From: Perkinsela sp. CCAP 1560/9
Lineage: Eukaryota > Protista > Euglenozoa: Kinetoplastea
Length of the DNA stretch: 64,000 nt
Direction of reading: 5' to 3'
NCBI GenBank assembly: GCA_965644495.1
Contig: CBFFSA010000006.1
Location: 496,001-560,000, forward strand
The position numbers and the translations under genes were made by a program. Every line of letters begins with the position of its first letter. Within the stretch, counting starts at the first letter, position 1. The notes beneath the pieces were generated by a model that saw only the letters and a program-made list of their open reading frames with translations, did not search any database and was not told the DNA's origin. Below, piece by piece: positions 4,271 to 54,550 of this stretch.

Positions 4271-4284
4271 CATCCCTTGTACCC

Positions 4285-11583: not shown

Positions 11584-12295
11584 GCGGTGGTTGTATAACT
11601 ACCGCTCTACCCTCGATTAATGAAAAAAAGGCGAACAAAAACAGTGAAAATATTAAGAGAAACACAGTAATATAATAGAAGACAAAATATAAAAGGCGGC
11701 TCCGGTGGTCCAAAACTGAAAAATATGGGCCCCCCCCGGGGGGGGGGATCCAGGGGGGAGGGGCATACGTCGAGATAATTTTTTTCAATTTTTTTGCTTT
11801 TCAAAATCGAGCGTCGGGAAGTGGTAGAGTATGCCGCGGCGATGATTTTCCACCCCCCCCCACCTGGGGGTAACCCCCCCTGGTACGCGCAGGAGGGGTC
11901 CAACGTCAAAATTTCCGAAATTTTTGGGAAGACCAAAAAGACGTTTTTTTGGTCCAAAATAGGTAAAAATATTGCCTTTCCAAAATCGACTCCTAAAAGA
12001 GATTTTCTCCTAAAAGAGATTTTAAGAGTTTTGCATCTCATCTACCGTTCTACGACGTTTTTTTTGCAGATTCGCCTCCTACCCCTACTGGTAAGGCATC
12101 CAAAACGGCCTAGTTCGGCTTAAAATTTCGCAATTTTCGCCGAAAAATCGAGCTTCTACTGCCAAAAGAATGAATTATTCATGATCTTTTGGTGATTTTT
12201 CTTTTTGATGCTTTTCGTTAAATGCGGTGGTAGTTTTCAACGTGAAGCGCGCAGCATGAGTGACTCCTAAGTTGAAAACAACTACCGCGTTAGAG
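11584..12295. mobile_element. Probable truncated non-autonomous DNA transposon (MITE-like)
   Basis: Related hairpins at both ends (GCGGTGGTTGTATAACTACCGC; GCGGTGGTAGTTTTCAAC...GTTGAAAACAACTACCGC), poly-C/G and poly-A/T tracts, right end followed by TA. No clean left terminus. Confidence 0.5.
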
Positions 12296-12479
12296 TATAT
12301 AACTGTATGTAAGTGTAAGAATAATTCTTCTGTACACAGTGTTTTTCTTTTATTTTTCGCTACTGTTCACGTACAACGAATGGACAGGGACTAAGTTCTC
12401 TAAAGCTATAAATCTAATTGTCGTGTCTACCTCTGAAATATTCTATGTTGCCATATTGCAGCACATTCTCATAATCTCT

Positions 12480-12728
12480 ATGGTGCAAATAAAGAGTGGG
12501 GGAGAAGTTTTCTCTTTGAACTCTGGACGGCAGGTGGCATGGAGTGAGGTTCCATCTTGGTTCAAACGTATTATGAGGAGCGAAGAACAAATGCCAACGC
12601 CATGTTATAAAGAAAGAGATGAAGCGCAAAAATGTTTTGAAACAGACGGCTTCTGGAGCGAAATATGTGTCATGCCTTTGGAAAATTTTGATACGTGCCA
12701 GACAAGGCACACCCCAACCCATGACTAA
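12480..12728 (+). CDS. Small twin CX9C mitochondrial intermembrane-space protein
   Basis: C-YKERDEAQK-C-x10-C-VMPLENFDT-C; 82 aa from ATG 12480. Confidence 0.7.
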   Translation: MVQIKSGGEVFSLNSGRQVAWSEVPSWFKRIMRSEEQMPTPCYKERDEAQKCFETDGFWSEICVMPLENFDTCQTRHTPTHD

Positions 12729-13018
12729 CGGAACTCTTTTCCTAAATGAAGGAGTTCGCATTTGCATAAACAAAACATTGTTCGAGACTTTATGATCGTA
12801 GTGCACACGTGTACAGGATACGCTGTATGTACATGTGTATGTATAGTATATACGCTGTACGTATACATGCAGAATATTTTATTCATGCGCTCTCAACTTT
12901 TTGTCAGTCATATAGTACGGCATTCTACAGCATTGTACGGCATACATTACAATGCATGATATACATGCTGAATGCATGACAGACAAATACTAACACTGAA
13001 AAACAACAGTACTTAGTA

Positions 13019-13164
13019 CTGTCCCCTCCCCTTAGGCGCACCCGGTTAGCCCCCCCCCGCCCCCCGCGAAGTGGCGCCAATTTATTTTTTGTGTACTGAT
13101 TCAGACCCCCCCGTTTAGCGTACGTTTTACGGAAAACGAGGTGTACTTAAAAGGGGGCGGACAG
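13019..13164. mobile_element. 146-bp mini-element of the CTGTCCCC-TIR family
   Basis: TA|CTGTCCCCTCCCTTA ... TAAAAGGGGGCGGACAG|TG; shares TIR and a CGCGAAG motif with 28276-29867 and 30800-32787. Confidence 0.6.
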
Positions 13165-13371
13165 TGCTACTAAACAAATACCCTATTTATGATAGCTAGT
13201 TATTATGCCCATAGCCACGTATTGTGCCCATAGCTACAGTAGTAGTTAATGTGCCTGGGGGCACTACTGTATAACCCGGAACACGGTTTAAGGACCTACA
13301 TGCATAGTTCGGAGTGCATTTTTCGTATACAGCACTTTTCGCGTACGCAGCAGTATAAAGCAATGTACCTA

Positions 13372-14136
13372 CAGTGGTGATCAGCGTCTTTTACCCCCCC
13401 CCTACAGGGGTAAAAAACTTCTTGTATTTTGTCCAAGTTTGGAAATATTTGGTATACCACCGTTTTTCTACCCAATCGTTCCGAATCCGAGGTCCTTCTC
13501 ACTCGAGCAACCCCCTACCCCCCTAGCCAGGTAGGGGTCAAAAAAGCTAATTACAATTTTTCTGGGTATACTTTTTCGAATGTTTCGGATGAAAAACAGT
13601 AGTAAATTAAGTCAGAAGACGCGGAAAAGGAGTGTAAAGTATTCCCTAGTATTTAGTAATATGCCCTTTGGCCTCCTTGACCAAGAGTAAACGCTTACGA
13701 TCGTCCGGGAAGATATTCTGAAATAATAAAATTCTTTAGCTACGGGAAGCCTTCCTGTTGATCTTCAGAAAAATGAAACGTTTCAATGATGGACCCAGGG
13801 TTAAGTTTATAAAGTTTTGAGACTGCCTTATAGGACTTAAGTCACTCGTATTCGATCTCGGAGCGCACGCGAGAGAAAGGTGAACACAGGGGGCGGTGCT
13901 TCGTCATGAATCACCAAAAAATGTATCAATTTTGAAAAACAATTTCTAATTTTGAAAAAAGAATCGAGTTTTTTGCAGTCGTTTTTCCAGTTTAGGAATG
14001 ATACAGGTGTCCACGAGTAAAAAGGACCTCGGATTCGGAACAATTGGGTCGAAAAACAGTCCCATAGAAAACATCTCCAAAAGCGATGAAAATACAAGAC
14101 CTGTAGTGGGGGGGTAAAAGACGCTGATCACCACTG
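13372..14136 (+). mobile_element. Tc1/mariner-type MITE, copy 1 (765 bp)
   Basis: TA-flanked; TIR CAGTGGTGATCAGCGTCTTTTACCCCCC extends imperfectly ~130 bp; an inverted sister copy lies at 22425-23183. Confidence 0.93.
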
Positions 14137-14241
14137 TACATGCAGCAATGTACATGTATGTGTATTGTGCACACACAACCTGCATACACTTTTAAGTTGT
14201 TTTTGGATCCTTCACTTTACTATCCTCTATTTTCAGGTGTT

Positions 14242-15990
14242 ATGGGTCGGAGATGGTTACTTATCTCAGCGCTCACGACTGGTCTTACTGGTGCCACGTA
14301 TTGGTTGCTTCGTCATAGTAGAGCTCCTCTGGGACAGCCTTTTCTTTGTCTGATCTCATTTTTAAAGCGACGTACGTTCGTTGAGGTCAATCACCCAAAA
14401 TTGGGTTTAGCATTTCGGTATTCAGCGTCCACTTGTGTACTTCGGGGTGAAATACGAATGGCCCCAGTCAGGGTTTTTGAATTTTATTTAACGCATCATG
14501 AAACTTCGCGTATTCTTATTACAGTCGAGCAATGTGGGGCCCCTCTTAGCCTTCAAGAGTACAAGACACATTCACTCAACGCAATTACTGCACAGCTGGG
14601 AAATATTGCTGTTGAGCATGAAAAAACCACCGTTTCTCTCGGTGGCCAACCAGCCATTGAATTTGAATACACACACATATCCTCACAGGGTACACCACGA
14701 AAAGTATGGTGTATCTTGGCCACTCTGGGTCACCGTGCCTATTCAGTGCACTTTAATAGTCATGGGAACGTGTATGATAAAGGTCTGACATATGCACAAG
14801 AGATGGCTCGGTCTATGTCAATATCACATGTATCGACAAGTGAAAGTTTTCAGTATTTCACAAGTGCATCTCACGGGTTAGGCATGCGAGTAGCCACGGA
14901 GTACAGCTTAGACGATACCGCCGCTGAAGAGGATACCCTTCTAGCGCGGTTTGTTACAACACGTGCTCCAGTTTCTTCCGTACAACTCATCGAGCAATCA
15001 TTTATTGAGGTCAGGTGCCATCGTGAGTCCTTCGTTGGCTCTGATGATAGCAGCATGTGGAATCATTATAGCTCAATGCTTCGCACACATGTAGAGCACA
15101 GTCTGTCCTCTTCTGAAAATTTAGAGTGGGTGACTCATGGTCCAGAAATAACGGTAGAGTATCTCTGTGACCGCGTTACACATAAAAAGTTGCAGCCTAC
15201 CTTTGCGATACACACTCTAGTGACTGAAAAGACACACATACCGGTTCAATATTTTTTCTACGATATACTTTCAACGAATCATGTGGAAGACAACGAAGAC
15301 ACGCAACCCATCAAAGTGTCACACGTCACGTTTTTCGCTGTACGGGGCAATGAATGTATGAGTTTGACGGCATGGGGACTTCGCGAACATTTTTCGTATG
15401 TATGGAATGACGCTTTGGCATGTATTCACTCTCTCACATTTACGCACTTGTTCTCTCTTCAATCTTGCATGCTTTCGTACTGTAATCCTACGTACCAGTT
15501 TGGCTTGCGAATTCCCTCGCAATTGCAAATAGTAGAGAGCGTTATCGGTGATCCTTTATTGTCACTATTGTTCAGAGAAAAATCTGACGAAGCTGGATGG
15601 AGAGGGCGATCCTTGGAGAGCAGTGGCTTTGCCGAATCATCAGCAAATTCATCTTTTGCTATGCACATTCGCGTACAAGACTTGTTTCCGACCTACGCAC
15701 AGCTTCACGAAACAGCTTCCCAATTTATAAATGAGCTACGACAAACAGAAGGTGTTGAAATAGAATCTGAAAAGCCAACGGCGCTACATGGACACATGGC
15801 CCATGAAGTATTGTACATTCAAGATGACGGTGAGGGACAAGTTCATAAAAATTGGGCAATACTTGCTATATACTGTGGACGTCAGTACATACTTCATGTA
15901 GTTGGCACCAGTACACGCTTTCGATGGTGGAAGAAAATGTGCCGTTCAGTAATACATGGGTTCCACTTCTATAATTGTGAATTATACTGA
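14242..15990 (+). CDS. Membrane-anchored protein with tandem PsbP/DcrB/Mog1-like domains
   Basis: N-terminal hydrophobic segment; repeated units (NHPKLGLAFRY / SASHGLGMRV / CNPTYQFGLRIP; SLGGQPAIEFEY / ALHGHMAHEVLY; MARSMSI / VIHGFHF). Confidence 0.6.
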   Translation: MGRRWLLISALTTGLTGATYWLLRHSRAPLGQPFLCLISFLKRRTFVEVNHPKLGLAFRYSASTCVLRGEIRMAPVRVFEFYLTHHETSRILITVEQCGAPLSLQEYKTHSLNAITAQLGNIAVEHEKTTVSLGGQPAIEFEYTHISSQGTPRKVWCILATLGHRAYSVHFNSHGNVYDKGLTYAQEMARSMSISHVSTSESFQYFTSASHGLGMRVATEYSLDDTAAEEDTLLARFVTTRAPVSSVQLIEQSFIEVRCHRESFVGSDDSSMWNHYSSMLRTHVEHSLSSSENLEWVTHGPEITVEYLCDRVTHKKLQPTFAIHTLVTEKTHIPVQYFFYDILSTNHVEDNEDTQPIKVSHVTFFAVRGNECMSLTAWGLREHFSYVWNDALACIHSLTFTHLFSLQSCMLSYCNPTYQFGLRIPSQLQIVESVIGDPLLSLLFREKSDEAGWRGRSLESSGFAESSANSSFAMHIRVQDLFPTYAQLHETASQFINELRQTEGVEIESEKPTALHGHMAHEVLYIQDDGEGQVHKNWAILAIYCGRQYILHVVGTSTRFRWWKKMCRSVIHGFHFYNCELY

Positions 15991-16446
15991 TTATACCTTT
16001 AAATTATAACTGTACACGTATGATAGAAACTTCAGTACGGAATATCCAGTCATGATGTATTCCGTTGCTGTTCTTAAAGAGTTTCTTTTGAAATATTTGT
16101 TGGTGCTTTCAATGTTTTGATTAACTGGAGTTCTGAATTACTTATGCGCTTAAGTTTCATTTGATTAGCAATTACTAGCAATGCTAGCACAGAATAGCGG
16201 ATATACGAGAGTTTTGCAGTGAAGTCTGGTTATTTTGATGAGCTAAATACACGGATACATTACAGTGAATATACAATGAAGTGATAAATATACGCTAAAG
16301 GTTATTTGCAAGCTCTTTATTCTTGTCTAACTAATAAGTCTTAATTCCTACACGCACTTCGCTTCTGCTTTTTCATGTCCTTCACAACTTAAAGAGGATT
16401 TCACGTCATACTATTTGATTGTGCCATCTTTAAAAGCGGGTTACGA

Positions 16447-17412: not shown

Positions 17413-17754
17413 AATGTGTTATATACCGCTATACTGCCGCTTACTTTAAGTAGGGAAGATTACGAACTCTTAAGTAACTTAAGAGTGTATGCAATTTTTG
17501 TCGTAATGATTTGTGCTCGGGCGCGCGTAGTATTAAAATGCTGGATGCAATAAATTTTTTTTTTTGAATGAAGTCGATATTACTAAATCAAAATTTCTAT
17601 TTAATAATTTCTATTTAGTATTTAATAGAGATTTTTCAGTACTGTTATATTAATGTTAATGTAACGTTTTTGCGCATTACCTTTTTTGTACAGTAGTATG
17701 GAGTAGTATACTTGCATAGATGTGCTGCACAAGGAGTGAACTACATGTATATTA

Positions 17755-19452: not shown

Positions 19453-19610
19453 TCTCGCGGAACACTTTTCATGGAACTCCAAAAGATTGATAACGAATGC
19501 TTTTCTATCCATAATCTTTTCATTACTACTTTTATTCTTCTCCTCTATCACGATATGCTAATACATAAATTTGTTGTCAGTTTTCCAAAGCCCATATTTT
19601 TTTAAAAACG

Positions 19611-22424: not shown

Positions 22425-23183
22425 CAGTGGTGTCTTTTACTCCCCCCTACAGGTCATTTATTTTGTTCGATTTTAGAAATATTTTGTATGGGACTGTTTT
22501 TCGACCCAATCGTTCCGAATCTGAAGTCCTTTTCACTCGTGGACACCTACTTACATGTATATCATTCCTAAATTGAAAACAAACTGCCAAAAACTCGCTA
22601 ATTTTTTTCAAAATTAGAAATTGTTTTTCAAAATTGATACATTTTTTGGTGATTCATGACGAAGAAGCAAGGCCCCCTGTGTTTACCTTCCTCTCGCGTG
22701 CGCCCCGAGATGCGCACGGCACTCGTGATCGAATACGAGTAACTTGAGTCCCATAAGGCAGTCGCAAAACTTCAGAAATTTAACCCCGGGTCCATCATTG
22801 TAACTTTTCGTTTTTTTTCCGAAGATCAACCGGAAACGTTTAAGAATATCTTCTGGAACTATCGTAAGCGTTTACTCTTGGTCAAGGAGGCCAAAGGGCA
22901 TATTACTAAATACTAGAAAATACTTTACACTCCTTTTCCGCGTCTTCTGACTTAATTTACTACTGTTTTTCATCCGAAACATTCGAAAAAGTACACCCAA
23001 AAAGTTGTAATTAGCTTTTTTGACCCCTACCTGGCTAGGAGGTAGGGGGTCGCTCGAGTGAAAAGGACCCCGAATTCGGAAGGGTTGGGTCGAAAAACGG
23101 TGGTATACCAAATATTTCCAAAATCGGACGAAATACAAGACCTGTAGGGGGGGGGGGGGGGTAAAAGAGGCTGATCACCACTG
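22425..23183 (-). mobile_element. Tc1/mariner-type MITE, copy 2 (759 bp), inverted relative to copy 1
   Basis: TA|CAGTGGTG...TCTTTTAC ... GTAAAAGAGGCTGATCACCACTG|TA; the interior is the reverse complement of 13372-14136 with scattered differences. Confidence 0.93.
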
Positions 23184-27194: not shown

Positions 27195-27608
27195 TGTTTT
27201 GATGTTATGCCCTAGCTATAGTAGTTGGACCACATTTTTAACATACTCTCCTGAGCAGCAGCTCCAGAAAATATGAAGCAGTGCTGTGAAGCAGTTGCTG
27301 TGTGTTTATCGTCATAGTTCTATAAGTTCATGCCTGGAATCCTTCAATGAGCAATGGAGCGTCTACAAAGAATCTAGCGTCCAGAAACTATTAAGGGTAG
27401 ATAAAAACGAAATCTTATTAGTATTACTATTTGTATTTAGTGGTGAAACGGTTTACTACCAAAGGAAAATTCAAGAATCCGAAATCAAAATTTAGACTAA
27501 ACTACAGTGAGGTATAGAAGCATCGTATATTTTATTTTGAGTTGTTTTCTTTGAATTGTTTCCCACACTCATGTATCGGGTGTACAGGATAGCTGCGATA
27601 GAAATCTA

Positions 27609-28118
27609 ATGCGCCAAACCAAGCGTTTGTTGGCTCAGAGGACTGTAATATTTTTGCATCGCCTCACATTACGTCCGAAGCAAGTCCTGAACTCTACGCG
27701 AGTGTTCACGTCGGAGGATATTGCAGCATATTCTGCTCTTACCGGTGATAATAACCCCTTGCACGAAATAGCTGAGATTCCTCGGAGCCTCGGACTTGCA
27801 CGTGCCTCTGATAAGCGGCTTGTCCCCGGTTGGCTCACTGCATCACATTTCAGCGCCCTTATGGCCAATGTTCTCCCTGGACCCTATTGTATATATCGTT
27901 CGCAAGCCCTACAATTTCGTGCTCCTGTCTACGAAGGGGATGTTGTGCGGTATGAAATTCGTGTTTTGCGACACTGCTCTCGATCTGGGATGGTTTCACT
28001 ACTCACCATGGCCTACGTCGGTGAGTCTTGTGTTCTTGAAGGTAGGGCAGAAGGAAAGCATGTCCCTCCATCTAAAGCGTTGTCCCAAGCACAGCAGGAA
28101 ATCAACAAGTCAGAGTAA
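27609..28118 (+). CDS. MaoC-like (R)-hydratase / 3-hydroxyacyl dehydratase, probably mitochondrial
   Basis: YSALTGDNNPLH, LVPGWL, LPGP..IYRSQALQFRAPVYEGD; basic N-terminal presequence. Confidence 0.85.
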   Translation: MRQTKRLLAQRTVIFLHRLTLRPKQVLNSTRVFTSEDIAAYSALTGDNNPLHEIAEIPRSLGLARASDKRLVPGWLTASHFSALMANVLPGPYCIYRSQALQFRAPVYEGDVVRYEIRVLRHCSRSGMVSLLTMAYVGESCVLEGRAEGKHVPPSKALSQAQQEINKSE

Positions 28119-28275
28119 AGTTCGGACCTTTTAACCTTATCCGGTGCAGTCAAGACGCGGATTTTTTTAAGTCGAATCTAACATAAAATTTATTTTTAAT
28201 TGAAATTTGGTATTGGATCTATGTCTCCCAGCACAAGCATCTCCTGAATAGTTGAATTATTTTTCAAGACAATTA

Positions 28276-29867
28276 CTTCCCCCCCTACTTATGCGCAACC
28301 GTTTGACCCGGCCACTTAAGCGCAATTTTGACACATCGTTCAGAAGAACAGCGCCGCAAAGCGGCGCGATTTTTTTTTTGTGGTACGAATTTTTGTACCA
28401 ATTTTCGCCGCTGTTGAAATGGAGAGTCTGCAGGTAGTCCCGTTGGGCGTTCAAAAATGATCTCCAGCGATCTCCTCTGATCCACACTGACCTCCACCGA
28501 TCTGTACGGCGAGTCTTTGCATGCTATACTGTACTGTACATCAGAGGAACTCTCCTGCCACGTACTGTACGCTTTTGAAATGATCAGTGCACCAGCGTGC
28601 GGCACCGCCTAGATGTGGGGCGGGTAAAGATAACGTCGGTAACTGCACTACAAATGCATGATAAACTAAACTTTAATTTATACACTATTTCGGACCCATG
28701 CTGTTAAAAGTCCATTCTTTTCCTACAATTGATCGGGTGCTCGCAAAAAAGGCGCTTACTCCGTGATGTGGTCATTTGAGGGCATAAGTAACCATACAAG
28801 CGAAGTACTGTACCTCCTCCCTAGTTATCTCTCACACGTCACCCCCTGTCCGACTGATCTTCCAATGAATCGGTAAACCCTTCGAACTTCGAAAAATTAC
28901 CTACAGCGTTCGCAACCGGTCGCCATTGGTTGCCACCGTTCGACAGCGAGCTACAGGTACCGTCTGCACCCCCTCCGCTGATGGTACTGACGCCTACCAA
29001 CTACCATTTTCTTTCATTATTTTTTATAACTATAATTATACACTGCCGACTAATATTATTGAGTTTTTAATTATTGGCGAAGCTACGCAACTTTTAATTA
29101 AAAAATCAATAATTTTTGTGCCAATAATTTTTGCAGAAATTTGTACACATCGACAAACAACAGGGGCGGAAAAAACCCAAAATTAGGTCAAAAGGGTTTT
29201 TTGTGCTCACAAAAAGATTCAAGATTTTTTACGGGGAAGAAAATTGCTTTTCACCAAAAAATTATTATACCTAGGAGGTACAATAAGTGTCCCTTGGTAT
29301 AACCAGGAAGGTGGTTTACATCTCTCTAATTTTGTTAAATGCGTTGCGAAGGGCAGGTTATTAAGTGGTCATTAAGTGAGGGGCTGCGGGTGTGTGATCT
29401 CACATGATTTCACGGCCGGGTGTTGAGATAAAGCCAATCCTGCTCCTACGTCAAATCCTCTCATGAAATTTGAGTTTTTGTGCAAAATCTATGACACTCT
29501 TCTCTAAAAAGTGACTGCCAAGATCAGACCTCATGAGAAATTCAAAAATAAAACAAAAAAAAATGTTTCTCGCCCAACATTGACAGCTTTTAATTAAAAA
29601 AACAATATTTTTTGTGTCATGAAATTTAGCGATAATAATTTTTGGCTTGGGTGTATTTCATTTTTAGTTATAAAATATAATTCATAAAAATTAATGAAAG
29701 GGGGAGTATGTAAAAAGCAGCCCCCCAGGGTACCCCGCGTACATAACTCATGATTGAAACACGCGCCGCGAAGCGACGCGAAATTTTTTTTCACCCCTTT
29801 TTTTGACCCGGCTACTTATGCGCAATTTTAGGCCAAAACCTGGTTGCGCTTAAGTGGGGGGGGACAG
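28276..29867. mobile_element. 1.6-kb non-autonomous TIR element (CTGTCCCC family), TA-flanked
   Basis: TA|CTTCCCCCCCTACTTATGCGCAACC ... GGTTGCGCTTAAGTGGGGGGGGACAG|TA; subterminal repeat TTGACCCGGCYACTTAWGCGCAATTTT near both ends. Confidence 0.8.
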
Positions 29868-29934
29868 TAGCACCTAAATTGCGCAAAAAATCTAATTATT
29901 CTTAAATTCTTCATGCTTCTCGTTACACATGCTT

Positions 29935-30759
29935 TCATCTATCTTCAAATCCTAGTCTGTTTGCCCGACAGTTTAGTTCAATCTTTAGTTGGTTGTTCTG
30001 GATTTCTACGATGTTATTAGAAACACCTTCGCTGGTAACCCACTCTATTCGGTGGTTTACAACCGGTACAACCTGGTTTACAACAAGGTAACTAAGTGCC
30101 AAGCTTGCACGCCATCCGTCAACTGCACGCCACCGTGCGCGTCCCAGCGCATGGGGCAAATGCAGCACATGGGGCGTCATTGTAGACTCTGATCGATTCA
30201 CTAGGCTTTTTACAAAGACTTTATGTGTCTTATCGGTCACATTACCACCAAGGTGTGGAAACATTGTTGGTCCTGCTTGGCTCCGATTACATCTCCCCCC
30301 TCTTCACCTTACTCGTACAAGTCTCATCTTTTTGCATAAAATTAACGGTTCCTCCTTAAGCCAACGAATATCGTGAGCTTGAAACACTAAGAATATTGCT
30401 TTCTTGAGAAAAACGAGTAATGGTCTTGACATTCACCTTTGATGCATAACAACAAACTTATATTACGATGCTTCCGCTATACCGTAGAGCATAATCAAGG
30501 TTTCCTTCGCCGTACTGCGCCGCCGTTTGTTGAACAAGGGTCCATCCTTCCAGAACTTCGCTCGACAAGCGTGTCTATCACAACAAAACCAGTAGTTTTC
30601 TTTCAGTTTGTATGCGACTTCCTCTGTATGACAGGATTTCCGACAAGAAACGTTCTGAAAAAATAGGTGGTGCCTACAAAACCACGTTACTATTTGGTCT
30701 TCGCTTAAATGAGATGCATACGTACGACGTTCAGAGACTGATACGCACGTTTTTCGCAC
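29935..30759 (-). pseudogene. Decayed Merlin / IS1595 (ISXO2-like) DDE transposase
   Basis: Minus-strand fragments in order: Zn-ribbon (CRKSC...WFCCDRHAC), QKDET near 30326, LVNRSESTMTP, AVDGWRA, VNHRIEWVTSEGVSNNIVE; broken by stops and frameshifts. Confidence 0.82.
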
Positions 30760-31090
30760 CCGTGGCAGTCCATTTTAAATATTATGTTCTTCATTGTTAC
30801 TGTCCCCCCCCCTACTTAAGAGTCCGCGGGGTACCCCCCTACTTAAGAATCCTTTTTGAGAGAGCCTCGGGCTGCCTGCGGCGCGAAGCGCCGCCAGATT
30901 TTTTTTTTGATTTTTTCTCTGTTTTCTTTGATTTTTTTGTTGTCTGCCCATTGCGTTTAGCTGTGTTTTTAATATTTCCAAGCTATTTATACTTGATGGT
31001 ACTCCGAGGAAGGGGCAGACTACGGGCAGGCATGGTACACAACCATCCTCCTCAACCCCCTTCAACTCTCTCGCGAACTGATCGAAGTTC

Positions 31091-32348
31091 CAGAGGTCCG
31101 TAAAATTACAAAAACTATTTTATAGTACTATTACAGTACTATAAACTTTGAAACACTATATATAAAAACTATATTTTTTTACTATTTTTCTTAGTAAGTT
31201 TTTTCAGAAAGTATTGTTTGAAATGCCGACTCGACGCAATTTATTTTTATCACTCTCGTTTTCTTGAAAGATTTCTCACTATTTTTCTCATCATTATGCC
31301 CAACAAGCGTCGTGGTCAAGCTCAAATCGTTTTTTTACACTTCGTTGAAGTCGATGGGGAAATCGACCTACTTTAATTTCAGATGTGTTCCAGCCCAGAC
31401 GCCTTGTCTTCTTAGGTCACTTTTCCTGTCGAAGTACAATGTGTAAATGTGAAATAGGGGGTAAGTGATTCGTCAAATTTCTTCAAAAGATTATGAATTT
31501 TGCAGGTATTGAATCTTGCAGGCTGTGCGAGGTGTTTTTATGTTTACCTTGCCATTGAATACGCCACGTCTAGGATCCAACGAGTGATCTAACGGGAACT
31601 CGTTGGACAACTGTAATGCGGTTTGCACGCTACAAGGAAAGAGCATTATGGGAAGAACTTGTTGTGAGCTATAGGATCCCGTCTTTTTCCACTTCTGGAC
31701 AAAAACTACAACTCTTTTCACTTTTTTCTACGCGTCAGCGTATCCACACCACTTGCTCCACCTGACATCTCGTGACCCCTCTAAGCCTCTACACCTCCAT
31801 CGGCTCTCTCCAGCGAAATTCCTCCAGGTCCATCGCCCGATCTGTCTACCGAGCGCCTTCCTGGACATGAAACACTGATAAACACCACATACAGTGTGGG
31901 GCTTTATCACGGGACGGGTTAATTAAGGGACACCCCCCATCAAGGCCAAAGTGTCCCGTAATTAACCGTCCCTTAATTCTCCTTTTTTTTCAAGGCTTTA
32001 CTATACCTTTTTTTTTCCATTATCTTCCTTTACTTGTCTCCTTTTTCGTTCCCTTGTCTTACAAAAACATTTTTATGTGTGCCTGTTAACTTGCGCGCTC
32101 TGTGATTTGAGCGCTACACTTGTAGTTCGTTTGTCCCATTCCAAATATATGACTCCACCCCCATATTGTCCCTTAAATACCCGTCCCGTAATTAAACTGT
32201 CCCGTAATTAAACCGTCCCGTAATAACACCACGCACTGTAGTTTTTATAGTACTATATAGTGTTTATAGTACTATAAACGAGGTTTATAGTACTATAAAT
32301 TTTCTTGAAACACTATAAACTATCTATAAATAGTTTTAGGGACCTCTG
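31091..32348. mobile_element. hAT-like non-autonomous element with 8-bp TSD
   Basis: CGAAGTTC|CAGAGGTCCGTAAAA ... TTTTAGGGACCTCTG|CGAAGTTC (TSD at 31083-31090 and 32349-32356); subterminal TATAGTACTATA-type palindromes at both ends. Confidence 0.88.
31892..32238. mobile_element. 347-bp Tc1/mariner-type MITE nested in the hAT-like element
   Basis: TA|CAGTGTGGGGCTTTATCACGGGACGG ... CCGTCCCGTAATAACACCACGCACTG|TA; repeated GTCCCGTAATTAA motifs. Confidence 0.85.
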
Positions 32349-33067
32349 CGAAGTTCTTCTCCCCTCCGATCACCCTCCTCACACGAGAACGGCAAATCTG
32401 CCGACCAACCCCCTTCATCTATCTCCTCACCTAGCCACGGTAACGTTCCGCTACCCCATTCCGGGAGCCAACCCCGTTCTCTTTTATCCCAAGTGTACGC
32501 AGTATTGCTTTACGAATATCATTATATTCTCCTGCATATCAAGGGCCATATTCTGAATATTTATGACAGTTTTCTTGAACATGCCTCAGTAGCACGTGGG
32601 GCTTAACAGTAGCACGTCGGGTACAGACGCCGACTTTCATTAGACAAAAATAGAGGAAAAAAGATAGAGATAAAAAACATAAACAAAAAGGGAACCGGGA
32701 ATATTAAATTTTTATGAAAGAATGATGACCCCCCACTTCAGAGTCCAAATGCCCAAAATCGGCGGTCTCTTAAGTAGGGGGGGACAGTATATCCTTTAGT
32801 GTTATGTCCTTTAATGTTATGTAGACGTGAGCAAGTGTTAAAAGTGAAAGAATATGACCCAAGGTGCTTATGAATGTATTTAGAAGAACCTCAAAAGTCA
32901 CTTTTGAAATATACACTTTTGAAAAGTGTATATAAAAAATGGTTTTTTGCGTAATTAAAGTACTACTCCATATTCTCTTTTCAACTCTACCTTAACGGTT
33001 ACACATGCAATGAAGTGAATTTGTTCCACCTATCGCTATTGCGCCATCTATTATACTTCTAGCTGTC

Positions 33068-33808
33068 ATGCACTCCGTCCGAATATCTCTTGATCCCGGC
33101 ATACGCAACTGGGTTCTATTTCCCCTTGTAGTAATAGTTTTTTGCTTTCTTTTGATTCGACATTATGTGACTGCATTAGTATCGCCTAACAAAGTTGAAG
33201 ATGTTCGACAGAAGGAGCTGGTCAAGCCATTGCAGCACGCGAAACTCTTGGAAAACTCTTTCGTTCTACCTCCCGATTCGTTTCAAAAACACTATGATGA
33301 GTTGACAAATACAGAGAACGGTCTGTTGCACGCACCAGTGAAGAACACTGAGATAGAAGCCATGATGAATCCCGTACAAATGAATAAGGTGATGCTTCAA
33401 CAACTTTCAGGAATGCTACCTAACTTACTGATGATGTCCATCGTATCCTATTTCTTCTCCGGGGTTATCATCGCACGAGTTCCTTTCACCCTGCCGGAGA
33501 GTTTTCGCCCGATGTTGCAAAGGGGGGTTAACCTACCTGCCTTAGACGTATCATATGTGACATCACTTTCTATGTATTTTTTGCTTCTGTTTGGTTTGCG
33601 TGGGGTTGTGAATCTAGTATTGGGGGAGACACCTCAAAGTGAGGGTGTGATAATGCCTCCTGTGTTCCCAGGATCTGCACATGGCGTTGACTATGAAAAG
33701 CTATACAAACAAGCTCTAGAGGATTTGAAAGTCGTAAAAGCGCACTATAAGTGTAAACTTGACGTTTTTTCTTGCATCTTAGATGACGCATCCAGCATAG
33801 AGACATGA
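33068..33808 (+). CDS. EMC3: ER membrane complex subunit 3
   Basis: LDPGIRNWVLFP, FFSGVIIARVPFTL..FRPMLQRGV, LDVSYVTSLSMYFL. Confidence 0.93.
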   Translation: MHSVRISLDPGIRNWVLFPLVVIVFCFLLIRHYVTALVSPNKVEDVRQKELVKPLQHAKLLENSFVLPPDSFQKHYDELTNTENGLLHAPVKNTEIEAMMNPVQMNKVMLQQLSGMLPNLLMMSIVSYFFSGVIIARVPFTLPESFRPMLQRGVNLPALDVSYVTSLSMYFLLLFGLRGVVNLVLGETPQSEGVIMPPVFPGSAHGVDYEKLYKQALEDLKVVKAHYKCKLDVFSCILDDASSIET

Positions 33809-45538: not shown

Positions 45539-45680
45539 GTCATTAAAATTATTTTTGACACGATGTAAAGAGAAACGATATATCCTACACACGTTCCACA
45601 TCAGGAATTTAATCTAATCAAAGTGGAGTGGCTTTTGTCTTGCTCAATAAATCTTTCTTTGCTTTAGACTTGTTAAAAAA

Positions 45681-48645: not shown

Positions 48646-48884
48646 AGTATGTCCTGTTTGTGCTTTTTGTCGTTTGTTCCACTGCATTATTTTTACGCGT
48701 ATTTTAATATGCAATGCTTCACAAGAAGACAAATAAGACAGGTCTTTTCGGTGAAAGTAAAGGAAAATTCGCTTTTCTTATGACTTTTTAGCTTGGCATT
48801 TTTCCTTTCGACAAAAGGACATTATCTACGTACATAATATTGTATATGACTATTGTATACCCTTTTTCCGTTATTTTCTATGGT

Positions 48885-49058
48885 ATGCCAGGGGTGTCGG
48901 GGGTTCGCTTGTCGAAGAAAGTTCACCCTCAGCCGTATATCACGCCGGACGGAAGCATAGTGCGAGCAGTGGCTTCAAAGCCACGGGCTTGTCACGAGAA
49001 GGGTTTTCTGTGGAAAAAGGACACACTCATCACCAAAAGAAATGGAATTAGAGGATAG
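48885..49058 (+). CDS. 57-aa basic protein, possibly mitoribosomal bL31m-like
   Basis: HPQPYITPDGSIVRAVASKPR has the P-x6-DGS-x8-PR spacing of recalled bL31m/MRPL55; preceded by a pyrimidine tract. Confidence 0.45.
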   Translation: MPGVSGVRLSKKVHPQPYITPDGSIVRAVASKPRACHEKGFLWKKDTLITKRNGIRG

Positions 49059-49187
49059 AGTGTGGCACTGTACTAAGAAATGCAAGGGTAGATTTCTAGA
49101 TAGGGTGTAAAGCAATTTTTTTTCAAAAAAGGCGAATTTTGCTTTACTTTAACCCTCTTTTCAATATTGTCTACGTAACATTTGCTT

Positions 49188-50225: not shown

Positions 50226-50611
50226 GGATCGGGGGTGGGGCGGGGGAGAGGGGGGGGGTTTGGGGTGTGGGCGATGGATTGTGCCTTGGAGGTTTTTTTT
50301 GCGTTTGAGGGGTATGTTACTGGGTGGTGCTGATTGTGATTAGGGTTGAATCGGACGGCTCTGTGAAGGAGGCTCTTTTTTTATGGAGAAGGGTGTAAGA
50401 TTTAGGGATGTTCCTGAAGTTTTGTGTTCTACTAACTTTTATTATCCTAATCTTTTCGATAGCAGGCGTTCTCTCGAAACTTTGTATTCTAGTGCACAAA
50501 TGCTGGTTTTTATTTTCTGCAATGTTTTTTTGACAAAGACAGGTATAGATGACATGTATACGTATACTTTAATTAGTGTAGAATAATACGCGCTGTACGT
50601 ATCCGTTTATT

Positions 50612-51481
50612 ATGACCGAAATTGCCAAGGATTTGTGTGCAGGCACTATGGCTGGCATGATGTGCAAGGTTGTGGAATACCCTATGGACACTGTGAAGGT
50701 TCGTCTACAGGATATGCACTGCACCTACCGGGGTACTCTAGACTGCATAGTCCGCATGTTTCGAGAGGAGGGACCACTTGGGTTTTATCGAGGTCTTCCC
50801 GCCCCGCTCTACGGGTGCATGATTGACACTGCGACCATCTTTGTCGTCTACAACGGTCTCTCCAACACATACCGCAATTGGAAGGGCAGTGCGTTGAATT
50901 CTGATCTCCCATTAGCGGGGACGGCGGCCGCGGGGTTTGGCGCCGGTCTTGCCGTCTCTGTCGTGCTCACTCCGATAGAGTTGGTCAAGTGCCGCATGCA
51001 GGTGCAGGACACACTGCCTCCGGAGAAGCAAGTCTACAAGGGGGTGTGGCATTGCGCTTGCCGGACGGTGTCCCAGGAGGGGGTACGGGGACTATTCCGG
51101 GGGTACACCTCATTTGCCGCGCGCGAGGCTCCTGGGAGTGCATTATGGTACGCAGTGTATGAGGGACTGCGTTCGTATCTTGCCCCGCACGGGGGTTCAC
51201 GCTCAGATGTACCGCTACTTGGCACTGCCATGGCCGGGGCCGCAGCGGGATTCTCGTACTGGACCGCAACCTTTCCTACAGATGTGGTAAAAACGCGAAT
51301 CCAAGTGGATCCAGAGTATGCGAATCACACCTTGAAACAAGGACTTAAGGATGTGTACCGTGAAGGGGGAGTTCGATCTCTCTACAAAGGCTGGGGTGTG
51401 ACGGTGGCTCGGGCCATGCCCTCGCACGCGTTGCTCTTTGTGACGTATGAATACTGCAAGAGGTATTTGGACACTTTGTAG
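50612..51481 (+). CDS. Mitochondrial carrier (SLC25; ornithine/carnitine-carrier clade)
   Basis: Three Px[DE]xx[KR] repeats: PMDTVKVRLQ, PIELVKCRMQ, PTDVVKTRIQ; REAPG and RAMP contact motifs. Confidence 0.92.
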   Translation: MTEIAKDLCAGTMAGMMCKVVEYPMDTVKVRLQDMHCTYRGTLDCIVRMFREEGPLGFYRGLPAPLYGCMIDTATIFVVYNGLSNTYRNWKGSALNSDLPLAGTAAAGFGAGLAVSVVLTPIELVKCRMQVQDTLPPEKQVYKGVWHCACRTVSQEGVRGLFRGYTSFAAREAPGSALWYAVYEGLRSYLAPHGGSRSDVPLLGTAMAGAAAGFSYWTATFPTDVVKTRIQVDPEYANHTLKQGLKDVYREGGVRSLYKGWGVTVARAMPSHALLFVTYEYCKRYLDTL

Positions 51482-52028
51482 CGCGCTCGAGTAGTCCTTG
51501 GGGGAATCACATGATGTGGAACGCGCAGTATTGCATCGAAAGTTTGTGGCATCACACATGAATCTTTTCCTGCAAATTGTTGTTTGCTCTATCCTCTGAT
51601 TTCCTTGTTTCGTCTGATTCTTTTTTTAATTTTGTACCTTTTTTGGCTTAAATTTTTCATGGTGTTATTCATAGTGGCTGTTAAGTTCATGTTCTAGTTT
51701 GAGATAAATGGGCGGCATTGATTCTACACTACAATTCCTAGTAAAGGGTTACTAAGACTCGATATCCTTCTAATTATGTAGTAGCTTAATTATGTAATGA
51801 TTTATTACGCTAATTATGTAATAGCAAAAGGAATAACATTTACTGTACTGAATAACAATCTAAAATAATACAACGTAACAACGGACACGCTACTGTTGTA
51901 TGTTGTCCAAAATCGTACCATCAAGGGCAATGATCTTGATTTTAAATACATGTATAAATCATAGATGTATAAATTAGAGTAGGTTCTAGAGTATGGAGAT
52001 TTCCAGCCATTAAAAGCGCGGTACGAAG

Positions 52029-53066
52029 ATGCAGATACTTTCATCTACCAATGAAGACAATTCGAAGGATACACCGTTTTCCTCTTTGCGAATATTAGCG
52101 GAGTTTACGGATGGGTCATCTAAAAACGTGGAGGTAGAATCACACACGAATTTTTCTGGTGTTATTATCGATTTGATTTCCGGAACGATGGCTGGCACAA
52201 CCGCACATCTTCTCGAACACCCCTTCGACACCGTGAAAGTGCGCCTGCAAGATGAACGATGCCTCTACCGCGGACCTCTGGATGCTGTGTTCCGCATGTC
52301 ACGTCAGGAAGGCTTGTTTAGTTTTTACAGTGGTGTGCAAGCTCCACTAGTTTCCAGCTGTGTCGAGACTTCTCTTCTTTTTGCAGTATACGGCCTGCTG
52401 ACACGTACTATGCGGGATTGTTACGGATACTCAGATGTCACTGAATTGTCTCCTGTACAATTTTCACTTGCAGGGGGCGTCGCCGGTGGAGTGGTTGGGT
52501 TTGTGCTCGCCCCGCTGGATCTTGTAAAGTGTCGTCTACAAGTTCAGGACGCTCATAACCACCCTAGCCATGCGCGAACCGTCCCACACCAATACGGCGT
52601 CACGAATCCACGCTACCGGGGATTACTGCACTGCACGTTTCATGTCGCACGCAAGGAGGGTATTCGCTCGCTTTTTCGGGGCGCCACTCCAGCATTGCTA
52701 CAGCAAGCTGTAGGGACTACATTCTGGTACGGTAGCTATGAGGCGACCCGTGGAGTGCTCGCTCAACGTGAAGGCATCACACCTAGTGAACTCTCGATGA
52801 GTAAAGTCGCGTTCGCGGGTGCCGTCGCGGGGGTGTTGGATTGGGCTGTTCTGTACCCCGCTGACGTGGTTGCTACACGCATGCGAGTAAATCCGCAATA
52901 CTCTACACACTCCGTCCGTGGTGTGTTTCAGGCAGTATATCGCGAAGGAGGTGTGCGAGCACTCTACAAAGGGTGTGGAATTACCATTGTTCGCGCAATT
53001 CCTGCCCATGCGCTGTTATTCGTGACATATGAGTGGTCTCGTAAACACTTGGAGAGAATTCTTTGA
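52029..53066 (+). CDS. Mitochondrial carrier, diverged tandem paralog
   Basis: PFDTVKVRLQ, PLDLVKCRLQ, PADVVATRM; RAIPAHALLFVTYE is nearly shared with the upstream gene. Confidence 0.9.
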   Translation: MQILSSTNEDNSKDTPFSSLRILAEFTDGSSKNVEVESHTNFSGVIIDLISGTMAGTTAHLLEHPFDTVKVRLQDERCLYRGPLDAVFRMSRQEGLFSFYSGVQAPLVSSCVETSLLFAVYGLLTRTMRDCYGYSDVTELSPVQFSLAGGVAGGVVGFVLAPLDLVKCRLQVQDAHNHPSHARTVPHQYGVTNPRYRGLLHCTFHVARKEGIRSLFRGATPALLQQAVGTTFWYGSYEATRGVLAQREGITPSELSMSKVAFAGAVAGVLDWAVLYPADVVATRMRVNPQYSTHSVRGVFQAVYREGGVRALYKGCGITIVRAIPAHALLFVTYEWSRKHLERIL

Positions 53067-53115
53067 TTTATCACTAGTCCATCCAACAAAAGTAGACGCA
53101 TTTCTTAGAAATGGG

Positions 53116-53170
53116 TCTACTAGTAGAAATTACTAGTAGAAAGATTACTAGTAGAAAGATTCTACTAGAT
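53116..53170. repeat. Short tandem repeat with palindromic core TACTAGTA
   Basis: tctactagtagaaat tactagtagaaagat tactagtagaaagat tctactagat. Confidence 0.8.
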
Positions 53171-53323
53171 TCTAATAAATCTAACAGGTTCAAATAGGAG
53201 CTAATAAACTGAAAGTCGGTATTGTACTTAATAATGGATATCCATGGGGATATTAAAGGAAGAAACACAATGAAACACTAAATTTTAGTTAGTTTTTATT
53301 TATACAATTTTGTCGACACAATC

Positions 53324-53779
53324 ATGACAATAGAGTTTGAGCCCTGCGTAGAAGACTTCTATTCTTTTGAAGAGATACCTGAAGGTTCTCTTCTTATTCT
53401 TCTTCAAGTTGGTTTCGCCGGTTGCTTATCTATCGCTCTTCTCCTTGGCATGATTTCATTGATTCGACACCAATGTTTTTGTCGCGCATGGAGGAATGTA
53501 CTATGTGTAGTGGCTGGAGTGCCTATTTTCTTTACAATACTAGATAGATTGCGACAGTACCTCATAACAATGGCCAATTCTACAATTTTGATGCTTTCAA
53601 TTTCTCAAATGGAACAGAAATGGCGCGAGAGCATAACACTTCAGAATTCTTTACTACTAGGGATTATGTTTTCCGTTGCAGGCTTCTTTGCGAGTTTGGA
53701 ATGTCATTTAAAATACGTATCACTGCATCTAGAGAAACCCCCTGTTAAGACTTCATCGAAAACAACAGGTTCTTTATAA
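53324..53779 (+). CDS. Small 3-TM membrane protein (BAP31/Yet-like topology possible)
   Basis: 151-aa ORF on the coding strand with three hydrophobic segments; family not established. Confidence 0.55.
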   Translation: MTIEFEPCVEDFYSFEEIPEGSLLILLQVGFAGCLSIALLLGMISLIRHQCFCRAWRNVLCVVAGVPIFFTILDRLRQYLITMANSTILMLSISQMEQKWRESITLQNSLLLGIMFSVAGFFASLECHLKYVSLHLEKPPVKTSSKTTGSL

Positions 53780-53831
53780 GCAGTAAAATCCATTATGCTG
53801 AAAATATCATTGTTGTCTACAATGCTGTATA

Positions 53832-54550
53832 CAGGGGGGATCACCAATATCGGGACACCTCCCATTTTTGTACCATGTGTCCGTTTCACCTGATTTTTGT
53901 TGCAAAAGAGATATCTCGACGCGAATATGATCCGAACGACATTTGGCGCCTATTTAAACACACTTGTAAAAAATGGTATAAAAAAAATAAAAAACAATCT
54001 CCAAAAAATATGCAAATTTATGTAAAAATTGTGCAAATCCCGTTAAAATTGTCTATTAAAGGATACAATTCTATCCCCCGAGCATACATCCTACTTTAAG
54101 TCACCTGACTTAAACTTGATAGAAAACTTGTGGTCAATCATGCATGACTACATTCATAGTTCTTTGCGTCCGAAAAATAGGCATGAATTTCGAGAGGCCA
54201 TACCCAAGGCTATTGAATATCTCCTAACCGAAAAGCGGGATATCCTAGAGAAGACTCTGAAGAGCCTCCCAAAACGGTTAGAAGAGTTACGAAAGTGTAA
54301 CGGAGGGATTATTTCATACTAAATAACTTTTTCAATGCTTTTTAAGACATTTTTATCCACATTTTCAAATGTGCAAATTTTGAAAAAAATCGTTTTTGTC
54401 ATACACACCCTACTTTTTAGGTGTTTAAATAGGCGCAAAATGTCGTTCCGATCATATTCGCGTCGAGATCTCTCTTTTGCAACAAAAATCAGGTGAAACG
54501 GACACATGGCACAAAAATGGCGGGTGTCCCGATATTGGTGATCCCCCCTG
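53832..54550 (+). mobile_element. Internally deleted Tc1/IS630-family transposon (719 bp) with ~130-bp TIRs
   Basis: TA|CAGGGGGGATCACCAATATCGGGACACC ... GGTGTCCCGATATTGGTGATCCCCCCTG|TA; retains the transposase 3' end. Confidence 0.95.
54101..54322 (+). pseudogene. Tc1-like transposase C-terminal remnant
   Basis: In-frame SPDLNLIENLW ... SLPKRLEELRKCNGGIISY*, matching the Tc1 DDE signature and typical C-terminus. Confidence 0.92.

What the first reader, a model, noticed from the sequence alone, without database searches (positions are those of the whole stretch)
11584..54550. Diverse class II DNA transposons (Tc1/mariner, hAT-like, Merlin) in a kinetoplastid polycistronic unit
Seen: at least nine elements or remnants of about seven families with TIRs and TA or 8-bp TSDs, plus two transposase relics, interspersed between clearly kinetoplastid genes. 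Known: trypanosomatid genomes carry essentially only retroelements (ingi/L1Tc, SLACS/CZAR, VIPER, TATE). To my recollection Merlin is the only DNA transposon reported in kinetoplastids (Bodo, Perkinsela). Inference: Tc1-type and hAT-type families with MITE derivatives at this density would be new for the group and imply cut-and-paste activity, possibly acquired horizontally.
Basis: partly seen in the sequence, partly recalled or inferred. Interest (0 to 1): 0.85.

Follow-up and report, generated by a model that had tools for sequence, protein, structure and literature searches.

The report
DNA transposons in a prokinetoplastid genome
The gaps between ordinary kinetoplastid genes in this window hold real cut-and-paste DNA transposons of the Tc1/mariner, hAT and Merlin kinds, which matters because published work knows kinetoplastids almost only for retroelements.

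Summary
The window is one plus-strand gene array of a kinetoplastid. A PheRS tree places the host in Prokinetoplastina, next to the Perkinsela clade. The assembly is 21 Mb.

The enlarged intergenic gaps hold 11 elements or remnants:
- Six TA-flanked Tc1/mariner-type elements from five families.
- One hAT-type element with an 8-bp duplication.
- A nearly full-length Merlin transposase pseudogene and a second Merlin fragment.
- A Tc1 deletion derivative that keeps 74 C-terminal codons of its transposase.
- One very abundant repeat whose class I could not settle.

All families are multicopy and dispersed over many contigs. Transposition is shown directly:
- Seven paralogous copies of the outer element keep the empty site of the hAT-type insert.
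- Five sister copies keep the empty TA site of the innermost MITE.
- Six hAT-type copies carry six different perfect 8-bp duplications.

Elsewhere the genome holds many uninterrupted transposase frames: Tc1 (at least 125 matches), Merlin (about 100), hAT (16) and also PIF/Harbinger (60).

The papers I could search report only TIR-less Merlin relics in Bodo and Perkinsela, and no class II elements in trypanosomatids. Horizontal origin is unsupported. First readers of this scan noted similar MITEs on other pieces of this genome, and one follow-up agent described a Tc1 family there, so this window is a further example.

The parts
11582..12300 (.). E8: very abundant interspersed repeat of about 0.7 kb; class unresolved (SINE-like retroposon or MITE)
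   Evidence: 866 first-look candidates in the genome, with copies about 80% identical. The left end TTGCGGTGG is conserved in 9 copies, and flanks are mostly TTA or TAA. In other copies the right end runs on 15 nt to ...GAAGAGCCTA, followed by an A-rich stretch. No verified TIR or TSD.
13019..13164 (.). B: 146-bp MITE-like remnant with CTGTCCCC...GGACAG ends, flanked by TA on the left and TG on the right
   Evidence: Read. It has 82% matches in three loci. The end type matches E3 and E4.
13372..14136 (+). A: 765-bp Tc1/mariner-type MITE, TA|CAGTGGTGATCAGCG...CACCACTG|TA
   Evidence: At least 20 full-length copies at 77-82% identity on many contigs. TA flanks nearly all ends of about 9 copies, with different outer flanks. 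Longer relatives with the same ends enclose a Tc1 frame at C4:239334-240896 (coordinates).
22425..23183 (-). A': second copy of family A in the opposite orientation, TA-flanked, with a 7-nt deletion in one TIR
   Evidence: 82% identity to A. Sequence read. The orthologous spacer in a relative is about 345 bp, against 888 bp here.
28276..29867 (.). E3: 1.6-kb TA-flanked non-autonomous element with CT(G)TCCCCCCC...GGGGGGGGACAG ends. Its inner segment 29039-29657 is a separate dispersed repeat (D).
   Evidence: At least 20 copies, the nearest 97-98% identical. D occurs alone at 9 or more places. TA flanks in 6 or more copies. D replaces about 41 bp of the sister copies. Short-read contigs of runs X2 and X4 bridge from the MaoC gene into E3.
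29941..30705 (-). Merlin (IS1595-type) transposase pseudogene, nearly full length, broken by stops and frameshifts
   Evidence: tblastn: 27% identity over 264-269 aa to 328-355 aa frames (E 1e-13 to 3e-19) and 51% to the copy on C15. The 109-aa piece finds 45 loci, many of which coincide with PF12762 hits. Pfam on the separate pieces gave nothing.
30800..32787 (.). E4: TA-flanked element with CTGTCCCCCCCCC...GGGGGGGACAG ends, host of the nested E5 and E6
   Evidence: Five full and many partial copies. TA flanks in 5 copies. Seven paralogues lack E5. A 16-kb contig of run X1 bridges from its right arm into the EMC3 gene.
31091..32348 (.). E5: hAT-type non-autonomous element with TIR CAGAGGTCC and 8-bp duplication CGAAGTTC (31083-31090 and 32349-32356)
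   Evidence: Eight copies at 87-94% identity. Six copies carry six different perfect 8-bp duplications. The empty site is kept in 7 E4 paralogues. Its subterminal ATAGTACTAT repeats recur around a 685-aa hAT frame.
31892..32238 (.). E6: 347-bp Tc1/mariner-type MITE, TA|CAGTGTGGGG...CACGCACTG|TA, nested in E5
   Evidence: At least 15 copies at up to 95% identity. Five of six E5 sister copies show a single TA at the uninterrupted site.
48871..49095 (+). Second Merlin fragment: the N-terminal 75 codons of a transposase
   Evidence: 49% identity to the N-terminus of the L065 frame, E 9e-23. That frame passes PF12762.
53830..54552 (+). E1: Tc1 internal-deletion derivative, TA|TACAGGGGGGATCACC with 139-nt TIRs, keeping the last 74 transposase codons (54098-54319)
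   Evidence: TIR arms 94% complementary. At least 15 loci. The 2.2-kb parents carry 324-334 aa frames. TA flanks in 11 of 13 flanks. The C-terminus is 58-61% identical to intact frames. DDE_3 match E 4e-4.

Best explanation
The enlarged spacers of this kinetoplastid polycistronic unit are filled with resident class II (DDE transposase, cut-and-paste) transposons of at least three superfamilies.

- Tc1/mariner-type elements inserted at TA dinucleotides.
- A hAT-type element inserted with an 8-bp duplication.
- Merlin left two decayed transposase remnants.

The window's copies are non-autonomous (MITEs and deletion derivatives) or dead. The inference is that transposases encoded by intact sister elements elsewhere in the 21-Mb genome moved them in trans. 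They pile up in intergenic DNA and inside one another, as in the three-level nest E6 in E5 in E4, presumably because insertions there do not break genes of the polycistron.

Shown: host identity, multicopy families, TIRs, target duplications, empty sites, and uninterrupted transposase frames with the right domains.

Inferred: mobilisation in trans, which transposase moves which MITE, and present-day activity.
For: Host:
- Tc-38, RtcB, PheRS, PRP3 and other genes all lie on the plus strand.
- The PheRS tree places the host with Perkinsela, PhM-4 and PhF-6.

Families and copy numbers.

Target duplications and empty sites:
- TA duplications in many independent copies.
- Six different perfect 8-bp duplications for E5.
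- Empty sites for E5 in 7 paralogues and for E6 in 5.

Transposases in the genome:
- Tc1: 125 matches, many open frames of about 375-397 aa.
- PF05699 (hAT): 16 loci.
- PF12762 (Merlin): about 100 loci over the cut-off.
- Domains confirmed on intact frames.
- Match to the Sleeping Beauty catalytic domain 5CR4 across the DNxPxH and SPDLNxIENLW motifs.

Reads: short-read contigs of public runs bridge the gene-element junctions. Element depth is 3-20 times the unique depth in the same runs.

Relative: the syntenic contig has the same genes and none of these elements.
Against: - No copy in the window encodes a complete transposase.
- Family A is old, with copies about 80% identical.
- Activity today is not shown. 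The joined forms seen in reads are explained by paralogues.
- The tie between E5 and a specific hAT transposase rests on subterminal similarity of 80-85% over 34-78 nt, and the TIR tip differs.
- The sequencing runs come from one study and may include the sample that was assembled, so they are not independent.
- E8 and segment D are not classified.
- The host placement rests on one protein tree.
Confidence: 0.9

Rival explanations
1. The elements are long-dead fossils. The superfamilies invaded an ancestor and nothing moves any more, so the window shows only decay products.
For: The window's copies are all defective. Family A copies are only 77-82% alike. The Merlin copy is riddled with stops.
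Against: The nearest sister copies are 95-98% identical for E3, E1 and E6. Dozens of transposase frames of full length have no stops, including sets with equal scores and 397-aa frames at 7 or more loci. Complete elements with long TIRs exist.
Confidence: 0.25
2. The elements come from another organism in the sample, such as a host animal, an amoeba or prey, and were joined to kinetoplastid genes by misassembly.
For: The organism appears to be known only from unnamed ENA assemblies. The runs come from a single study.
Against: Each element sits between kinetoplastid genes with a clean target duplication. Short-read contigs cross gene-element junctions with few or no differences. The same families occur on more than 20 contigs. 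The elements are nested with preserved empty sites in paralogues.
Confidence: 0.03
3. The superfamilies arrived recently by horizontal transfer from an animal, amoeba or bacterial donor.
For: Patchy distribution: none in trypanosomatids (PMC12278014), and none in the 21.6-kb syntenic contig of a relative.
Against: Within the genome the Tc1 transposases differ by up to about 70%, which implies long residence. Outside unnamed ENA contigs the best matches are 24-29% identical. Word searches with the Tc1 and hAT frames found no named relative.
Confidence: 0.1

Closest known systems
Tc1/mariner (ITm) superfamily, e.g. Tc1 and Sleeping Beauty, with their Stowaway-like MITEs
   Same: TA target duplication, TIRs beginning CAGT or CTGT, an HTH plus DDE_3 transposase of about 340-390 aa, a match to the Sleeping Beauty catalytic domain, and MITEs made by internal deletion.
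   Different: The host lineage is a kinetoplastid. The sequences are very divergent, at most about 36% identical to anything outside unnamed contigs. In the E1 clade the second D and the E are 32 residues apart by motif, against 34 in Tc1 and Sleeping Beauty. Some families have TIRs of 140-150 nt.
hAT superfamily (hobo, Ac, Tol2) and its MITEs
   Same: 8-bp target duplication, short TIR starting CAGAG (YARNG), subterminal short repeats, and transposases with the hAT dimerisation domain in the same genome.
   Different: The autonomous partner with exactly this TIR was not found. I found no paper reporting hAT in Kinetoplastea.
[quoted passage not shown] 2021, PMC8101967)
   Same: An IS1595-type DDE transposase in a non-trypanosomatid kinetoplastid. 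The window's copies likewise lack recognisable TIRs and TSDs.
   Different: This genome holds about 100 loci over the Pfam cut-off, many with open 300-450 aa frames, rather than a few divergent copies.
Trypanosomatid mobilome (ingi/L1Tc, CRE/SLACS, VIPER, TATE)
   Same: Elements accumulate between genes of polycistronic units.
   Different: Those are all retroelements. The elements here carry TIRs and fixed-length target duplications typical of DDE cut-and-paste transposition.

Membership tests
Tc1/mariner superfamily | TA target-site duplication | tested here: met
   Families A, E1, E3 and E4 have TA on both sides in most of 5-13 independent copies each. For E6, TA is duplicated in the window and single in five of six sister copies.
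Tc1/mariner superfamily | Terminal inverted repeats | tested here: met
   39-139 nt arms, 94-97% complementary. The tips are conserved across copies.
Tc1/mariner superfamily | DD(E/D) transposase with N-terminal HTH domains | tested here: met
   Intact 375-386 aa frames carry DDE_3 plus HTH_29/HTH_23/HTH_Tnp_Tc3_2. Match to 5CR4 at E 3e-9. The D, D and E motifs are found. The window holds only the last 74 codons.
Tc1/mariner superfamily | MITEs share their ends with an autonomous element | tested here: met
   E1 ends flank 324-334 aa frames in L005, L013 and L006. Family A ends enclose a Tc1 frame at C4:239334-240896, by coordinates only. For E3, E4 and E6 no partner was identified.
hAT superfamily | 8-bp target-site duplication | tested here: met
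   Six copies carry six different perfect 8-mers. The single 8-mer is present at seven empty paralogous sites.
hAT superfamily | Short TIR with a 5' YARNG tip | tested here: met
   CAGAGGTCC(G/C)TAAAA at both ends.
hAT superfamily | Transposase with the hAT dimerisation domain, linked to the element | tested here: inconclusive
   PF05699 passes the cut-off at 16 loci, with frames up to 898 aa. The 685-aa frame in L050 is flanked by E5-like subterminal repeats (80-85% identity), but its TIR tip is CAGAAACTATAA. Merlin loci lack these motifs.
Merlin superfamily | DDE_Tnp_IS1595 transposase domain | tested here: met
   Not detected by Pfam on the separate pieces. The relic does align over about 265 aa to frames of this genome that pass PF12762.
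Merlin superfamily | TIRs with an 8-9 bp target duplication | not tested
   No ends were recognised around 29941-30705. Neighbouring elements abut the relic.
PIF/Harbinger (considered for E8) | 3-bp TWA duplication, TIRs, DDE_Tnp_4 partner | tested here: inconclusive
   Left flanks are TTA or TAA in 6 of 9 copies. The true right end lies further out and is followed by an A-rich stretch. PF13359 is present at 60 loci, but no link to E8 was found.
Kinetoplastea (host) | Kinetoplastid-specific genes, unidirectional gene arrays, phylogenetic placement | tested here: met
   Tc-38 domain. All long ORFs lie on the plus strand. PheRS falls inside the kinetoplastid clade (100/100) and beside the Perkinsela clade (99/95). 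This is a single gene.

The most novel reading that the evidence does not exclude
A prokinetoplastid carries a rich, still active class II mobilome with hundreds of copies. It includes Tc1/mariner with an unusual 32-residue spacing between the second D and the E, plus hAT, Merlin and PIF/Harbinger. If so, the ancestral kinetoplastid mobilome was diverse and trypanosomatids lost it. Native cut-and-paste transposons that work under polycistronic transcription would also be at hand.
Probability: 0.5. Interest if true: 0.65.

Novelty: new member of a known kind. Interest (0 to 1): 0.55.

Why it matters
Published surveys describe kinetoplastid mobilomes as retroelement-only. The sole exception is a few TIR-less Merlin relics, and the surveys infer an ancestor with a poor mobilome. 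A kinetoplastid genome with several class II superfamilies changes that picture, because it shows clean target duplications, nested insertions and intact transposases.

It gives a test case for how cut-and-paste elements persist where genes are transcribed as long polycistrons. It also offers candidate native transposases for genetic tools in kinetoplastids.

It is not a new kind of element. The same conclusion can be reached from other windows of this genome.

Tried and rejected
- Pfam on the separate open pieces of the Merlin relic found nothing. The identity was settled by homology to genomic copies instead.
- I first read E8 as a Harbinger-type MITE because of its TTA/TAA flanks. I withdrew this after other copies showed a 15-nt longer right end followed by an A-rich stretch. 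In the one filled-versus-empty comparison I read at most a 4-nt AATT duplication.
- Segment D does not behave as a clean insertion. It replaces about 41 bp of the sister copies, and no TIR or TSD was found.
- I tested whether transposase frames point the same way as flanking ORFs, as polycistronic expression might favour. The count was 18 same to 24 opposite, so there is no bias at this crude level.
- Word-based homologue searches with a Tc1 frame and a hAT frame gave no named relatives. The exhaustive search gave only distant Tc1-type proteins outside unnamed ENA contigs. There is therefore no donor to name.
- The ORF at 30612-31103 has no family and overlaps the Merlin relic and the E4 arm, so I take it as spurious.
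Independent copies of E6, E8 and D could not be fetched.
The reads call used 5,801 letters.
Full report
**Setting**

All long ORFs of the window lie on the plus strand. They encode ordinary housekeeping proteins:
- RtcB, PheRS alpha, a glyoxalase II-like hydrolase, PRP3, EMC3, an XPD-type helicase, SRP68, SLD5 and two mitochondrial carriers.
- One protein with the trypanosome Tc-38 domain.

PheRS finds its best named relatives in the free-living prokinetoplastids PhM-4 (54%) and PhF-6 (52%), and in Perkinsela sp. CCAP 1560/4 (53%). In a maximum-likelihood tree it falls inside the kinetoplastid clade (100/100). Within that clade it sits in a group with an unnamed ENA sequence, sister to the Perkinsela clade (99/95). 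This is one gene, so the placement is provisional.

The assembly has 21.0 Mb in 110 contigs, and the window is C6:496001-560000. A 32-kb contig of a related organism (ENA ERZ25072283) carries the same gene order at 39-85% protein identity: RtcB, TIM, ribosomal proteins, a small CHCH-like gene, a GTPase, PheRS, the hydrolase, an unnamed gene, PRP3, EMC3, a zinc-knuckle protein and XPD.

**Anatomy**

Most spacers are 150-450 bp, but a few are 0.8-5 kb. Repeat searches and reading of the sequence, checked against sister copies, give these pieces:
- E8, 11582 to about 12300.
- B, 13019-13164. Ends CTGTCCCC...GGACAG, flanked by TA and TG.
- A, 13372-14136. TA|CAGTGGTGATCAGCG...|TA.
- A', 22425-23183. 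Same family in the opposite orientation.
- E3, 28276-29867. TA-flanked, with CT(G)TCCCCCCC ends and an inner segment D at 29039-29657.
- A Merlin pseudogene at 29941-30705 on the minus strand.
- E4, 30800-32787. TA|CTGTCCCCCCCCC...GGGGGGGACAG|TA.
- E5, 31091-32348, inside E4. TIR CAGAGGTCC, 8-bp duplication CGAAGTTC.
- E6, 31892-32238, inside E5. TA|CAGTGTGGGG...CACTG|TA.
- A second Merlin fragment at 48871-49095.
- E1, 53830-54552. TA|TACAGGGGGGATCACC, with 139-nt arms 94% complementary.

A BLAST of the whole window against about 275 kb of loci fetched from elsewhere in the genome found shared sequence almost only in these stretches. The exceptions are 89 bp just beyond E4's right end (32810-32898) and 40 bp at 49116-49155 beside the second Merlin fragment. 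E6 found no match in the fetched loci, but its copies are listed.

**They are repeat families, not chance inverted repeats**

| Family | Copies found in the genome | Identity to the window copy |
|---|---|---|
| A | at least 20 full-length, on many contigs | 77-82% |
| E1 | at least 15 loci | up to 98% |
| E5 | 8 near full-length | 87-94% |
| E3 | at least 20 | nearest 97-98% |
| D | at least 9, standing alone | about 77-88% |
| E4 | 5 full, many partial | 78-85% (full copies) |
| E6 | at least 15 | up to 95% |
| E8 | 866 first-look candidates | about 80% |

In public short-read contigs the unique genes have depth of about 90, while element stretches reach 300-2000 in the same run.

**Proof of transposition**

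- For families A, E1, E3 and E4, independent copies with unrelated outer flanks nearly always have TA on both sides.
- For E5, six copies carry six different perfect 8-bp duplications: CGAAGTTC, CTCAGAAT, TTTTTTTA, GTTCAAAA, ATATTTTC and ATTTATAG.
- Seven paralogous E4 copies read straight through ...ACTGAT[CGAAGTTC]TCCTCCCC..., with the 8-mer present once. That is the empty site of E5.
- Five E5 sister copies read ...CACCATA[TA]GTTTTTATAG... with one TA. That is the empty site of E6.
- The order of events is therefore E4, then E5 into E4, then E6 into E5.

**Superfamily assignment**

*Tc1/mariner*
- E1 keeps 74 C-terminal codons (...SPDLNLIENLW...) that are 58-61% identical to intact 375-386 aa frames elsewhere.
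- Its 2.2-kb parents carry 324-334 aa frames.
- Such frames have DDE_3 and HTH domains. They match the Sleeping Beauty catalytic domain (5CR4, E 3e-9) across the second aspartate and the glutamate, with a 2-residue shorter spacing. By motif the pattern is D-94-D-32-E.
- One Tc1 query found 125 matches from 401 candidates, ranging from 27% to 100% identity. Many are uninterrupted frames of 375-397 aa.
- Family A ends enclose such a frame at C4:239334-240896 (coordinates).
- A complete element with about 150-nt TIRs and a 382-aa frame is seen in an ENA contig.

*hAT*
- PF05699 passes its cut-off at 16 loci, with frames up to 898 aa.
- The ATAGTACTAT subterminal repeats of E5 recur on both sides of a 685-aa hAT frame. 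Among the loci fetched through a transposase match, they occur only around the hAT loci L047 and L050, and in none of the Merlin loci.
- The TIR tip differs, so the exact partner is not identified.

*Merlin*
- PF12762 passes its cut-off at about 100 loci.
- The window's relic aligns over about 265 aa to such frames (E down to 3e-19), and at 51% to one copy.

*PIF/Harbinger*

**What is not settled**

- E8 begins at a conserved TTGCGGTGG, with mostly TTA or TAA before it. In other copies its right end extends 15 nt further and is followed by an A-rich stretch. It may be a SINE-like retroposon rather than a class II element.
- D replaces about 41 bp of the sister E3 copies rather than inserting cleanly.
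- Present activity is inferred from intact frames and 95-98% identical copies. It is not observed.

**Assembly check**

Contigs built from public runs of one study cover the stretch 27600-33400:
- Records of X2 and X4 run from the MaoC gene 35 nt into E3.
- A 16-kb record of X1 runs from 272 nt inside E4's right arm into the EMC3 gene without a difference.
- Joined forms that skip E5 with 8 shared letters match the paralogous empty sites.

The runs may include the assembled sample, so this rules out a long-read chimera but is not independent biology.

**Comparison with a relative**

The syntenic contig of the relative contains none of the window's families and no transposase of the three kinds tested (Tc1, hAT, Merlin).

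| Spacer | Relative | This window |
|---|---|---|
| Hydrolase to next gene | about 345 bp | 888 bp, of which 761 is A' |
| PRP3 to EMC3 | 736 bp | 5.9 kb, of which about 4.6 kb is elements and 0.5 kb is the MaoC gene |

**Literature**

- Lopes et al. 2021 (PMC8101967) call Merlin in Bodo saltans and Perkinsela the first DNA transposon in kinetoplastids. They found no TIRs or TSDs.
- A 2025 survey of 57 trypanosomatids found no class II elements (PMC12278014).
- Searches for prokinetoplastid or Ichthyobodo genomes with transposons, and for kinetoplastids with mariner, hAT or Harbinger, found nothing further.
- Subscription-only papers are not covered.

**Origin**

- The Tc1 frame has only unnamed ENA relatives above 33% identity. 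Named hits (an arachnid, a powdery mildew) are 24-29% identical.
- The hAT frame found nothing in the word-based search.
- Together with the deep divergence inside the genome, this argues for long residence. It gives no support to recent horizontal transfer.

**Earlier notes of this scan**

Notes on other pieces of this genome already describe TA-flanked MITEs, a Tc1 family and IS30-type elements. Notes on this window name the nest, the hAT-type element, the Merlin relic and the Tc1 derivative. I tested the window-level claims myself. I did not examine IS30.

**Verdict**

This is a genuine, well-supported case of known transposon superfamilies in a lineage where the literature I could search does not report them. 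The category is a new member of a known kind. Interest is moderate to fairly high for kinetoplastid and transposon specialists.

Noticed in passing
G000:C2:618440-637295 (outside the window): Twelve PF12762 (Merlin DDE) hits spaced about 1692 bp apart, eleven with a 241-aa and one with a 200-aa open frame. This is a tandem array of a Merlin-derived ORF, possibly a domesticated or amplified gene.
   Followed up: no
window 12480-12728 (+): A small twin Cx9C (CHCH-like) protein gene lies inside the 3.1-kb 'gap', with an orthologue in the related contig at L085:5989-6204. E8 lies upstream of it, and B and A lie downstream.
   Followed up: partly
window 28556-28627 (-), inside E3: A stretch of 24 codons is 71% identical to residues about 315-342 of two 622-aa hAT frames (L045, L046), E 8e-7. 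It may be a captured or overwritten hAT fragment inside a TA-flanked element.
   Followed up: no
whole genome G000: PIF/Harbinger-type DDE_Tnp_4 (PF13359) passes its cut-off at 60 loci, many with open frames of 347-431 aa.
   Followed up: partly
window 14137-14142: Element A ends 3 nt before the first ATG of the ORF at 14140-15990. The real start is probably the later MGRRWLL, so the MITE would sit in the 5' untranslated or splice-acceptor region of that gene.
   Followed up: no
L034 (G000:C15:158248-162041), L039 (G000:C1:252975-256780) and L069 (G000:C4:351921-355684): Sister copies are themselves nested. E1-family elements sit inside E5 copies in L034 and L039. An E8-family copy sits inside an E3 copy in L069. 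Nesting is common in this genome.
   Followed up: partly
window 30612-31103 (+): A 163-aa ORF without any family match spans the Merlin relic (opposite strand) and the left arm of E4. It is probably not a gene.
   Followed up: partly
L086 (ENA ERZ24900291 ctg3877l) 3260-5030: A complete Tc1 element, TA|CAGTGGTTTCAGTTGATC..., with about 150-nt TIRs and a 382-aa frame, lies directly beside an E4-like element in a minus-strand gene array. I did not establish whether this assembly is the same organism.
   Followed up: partly
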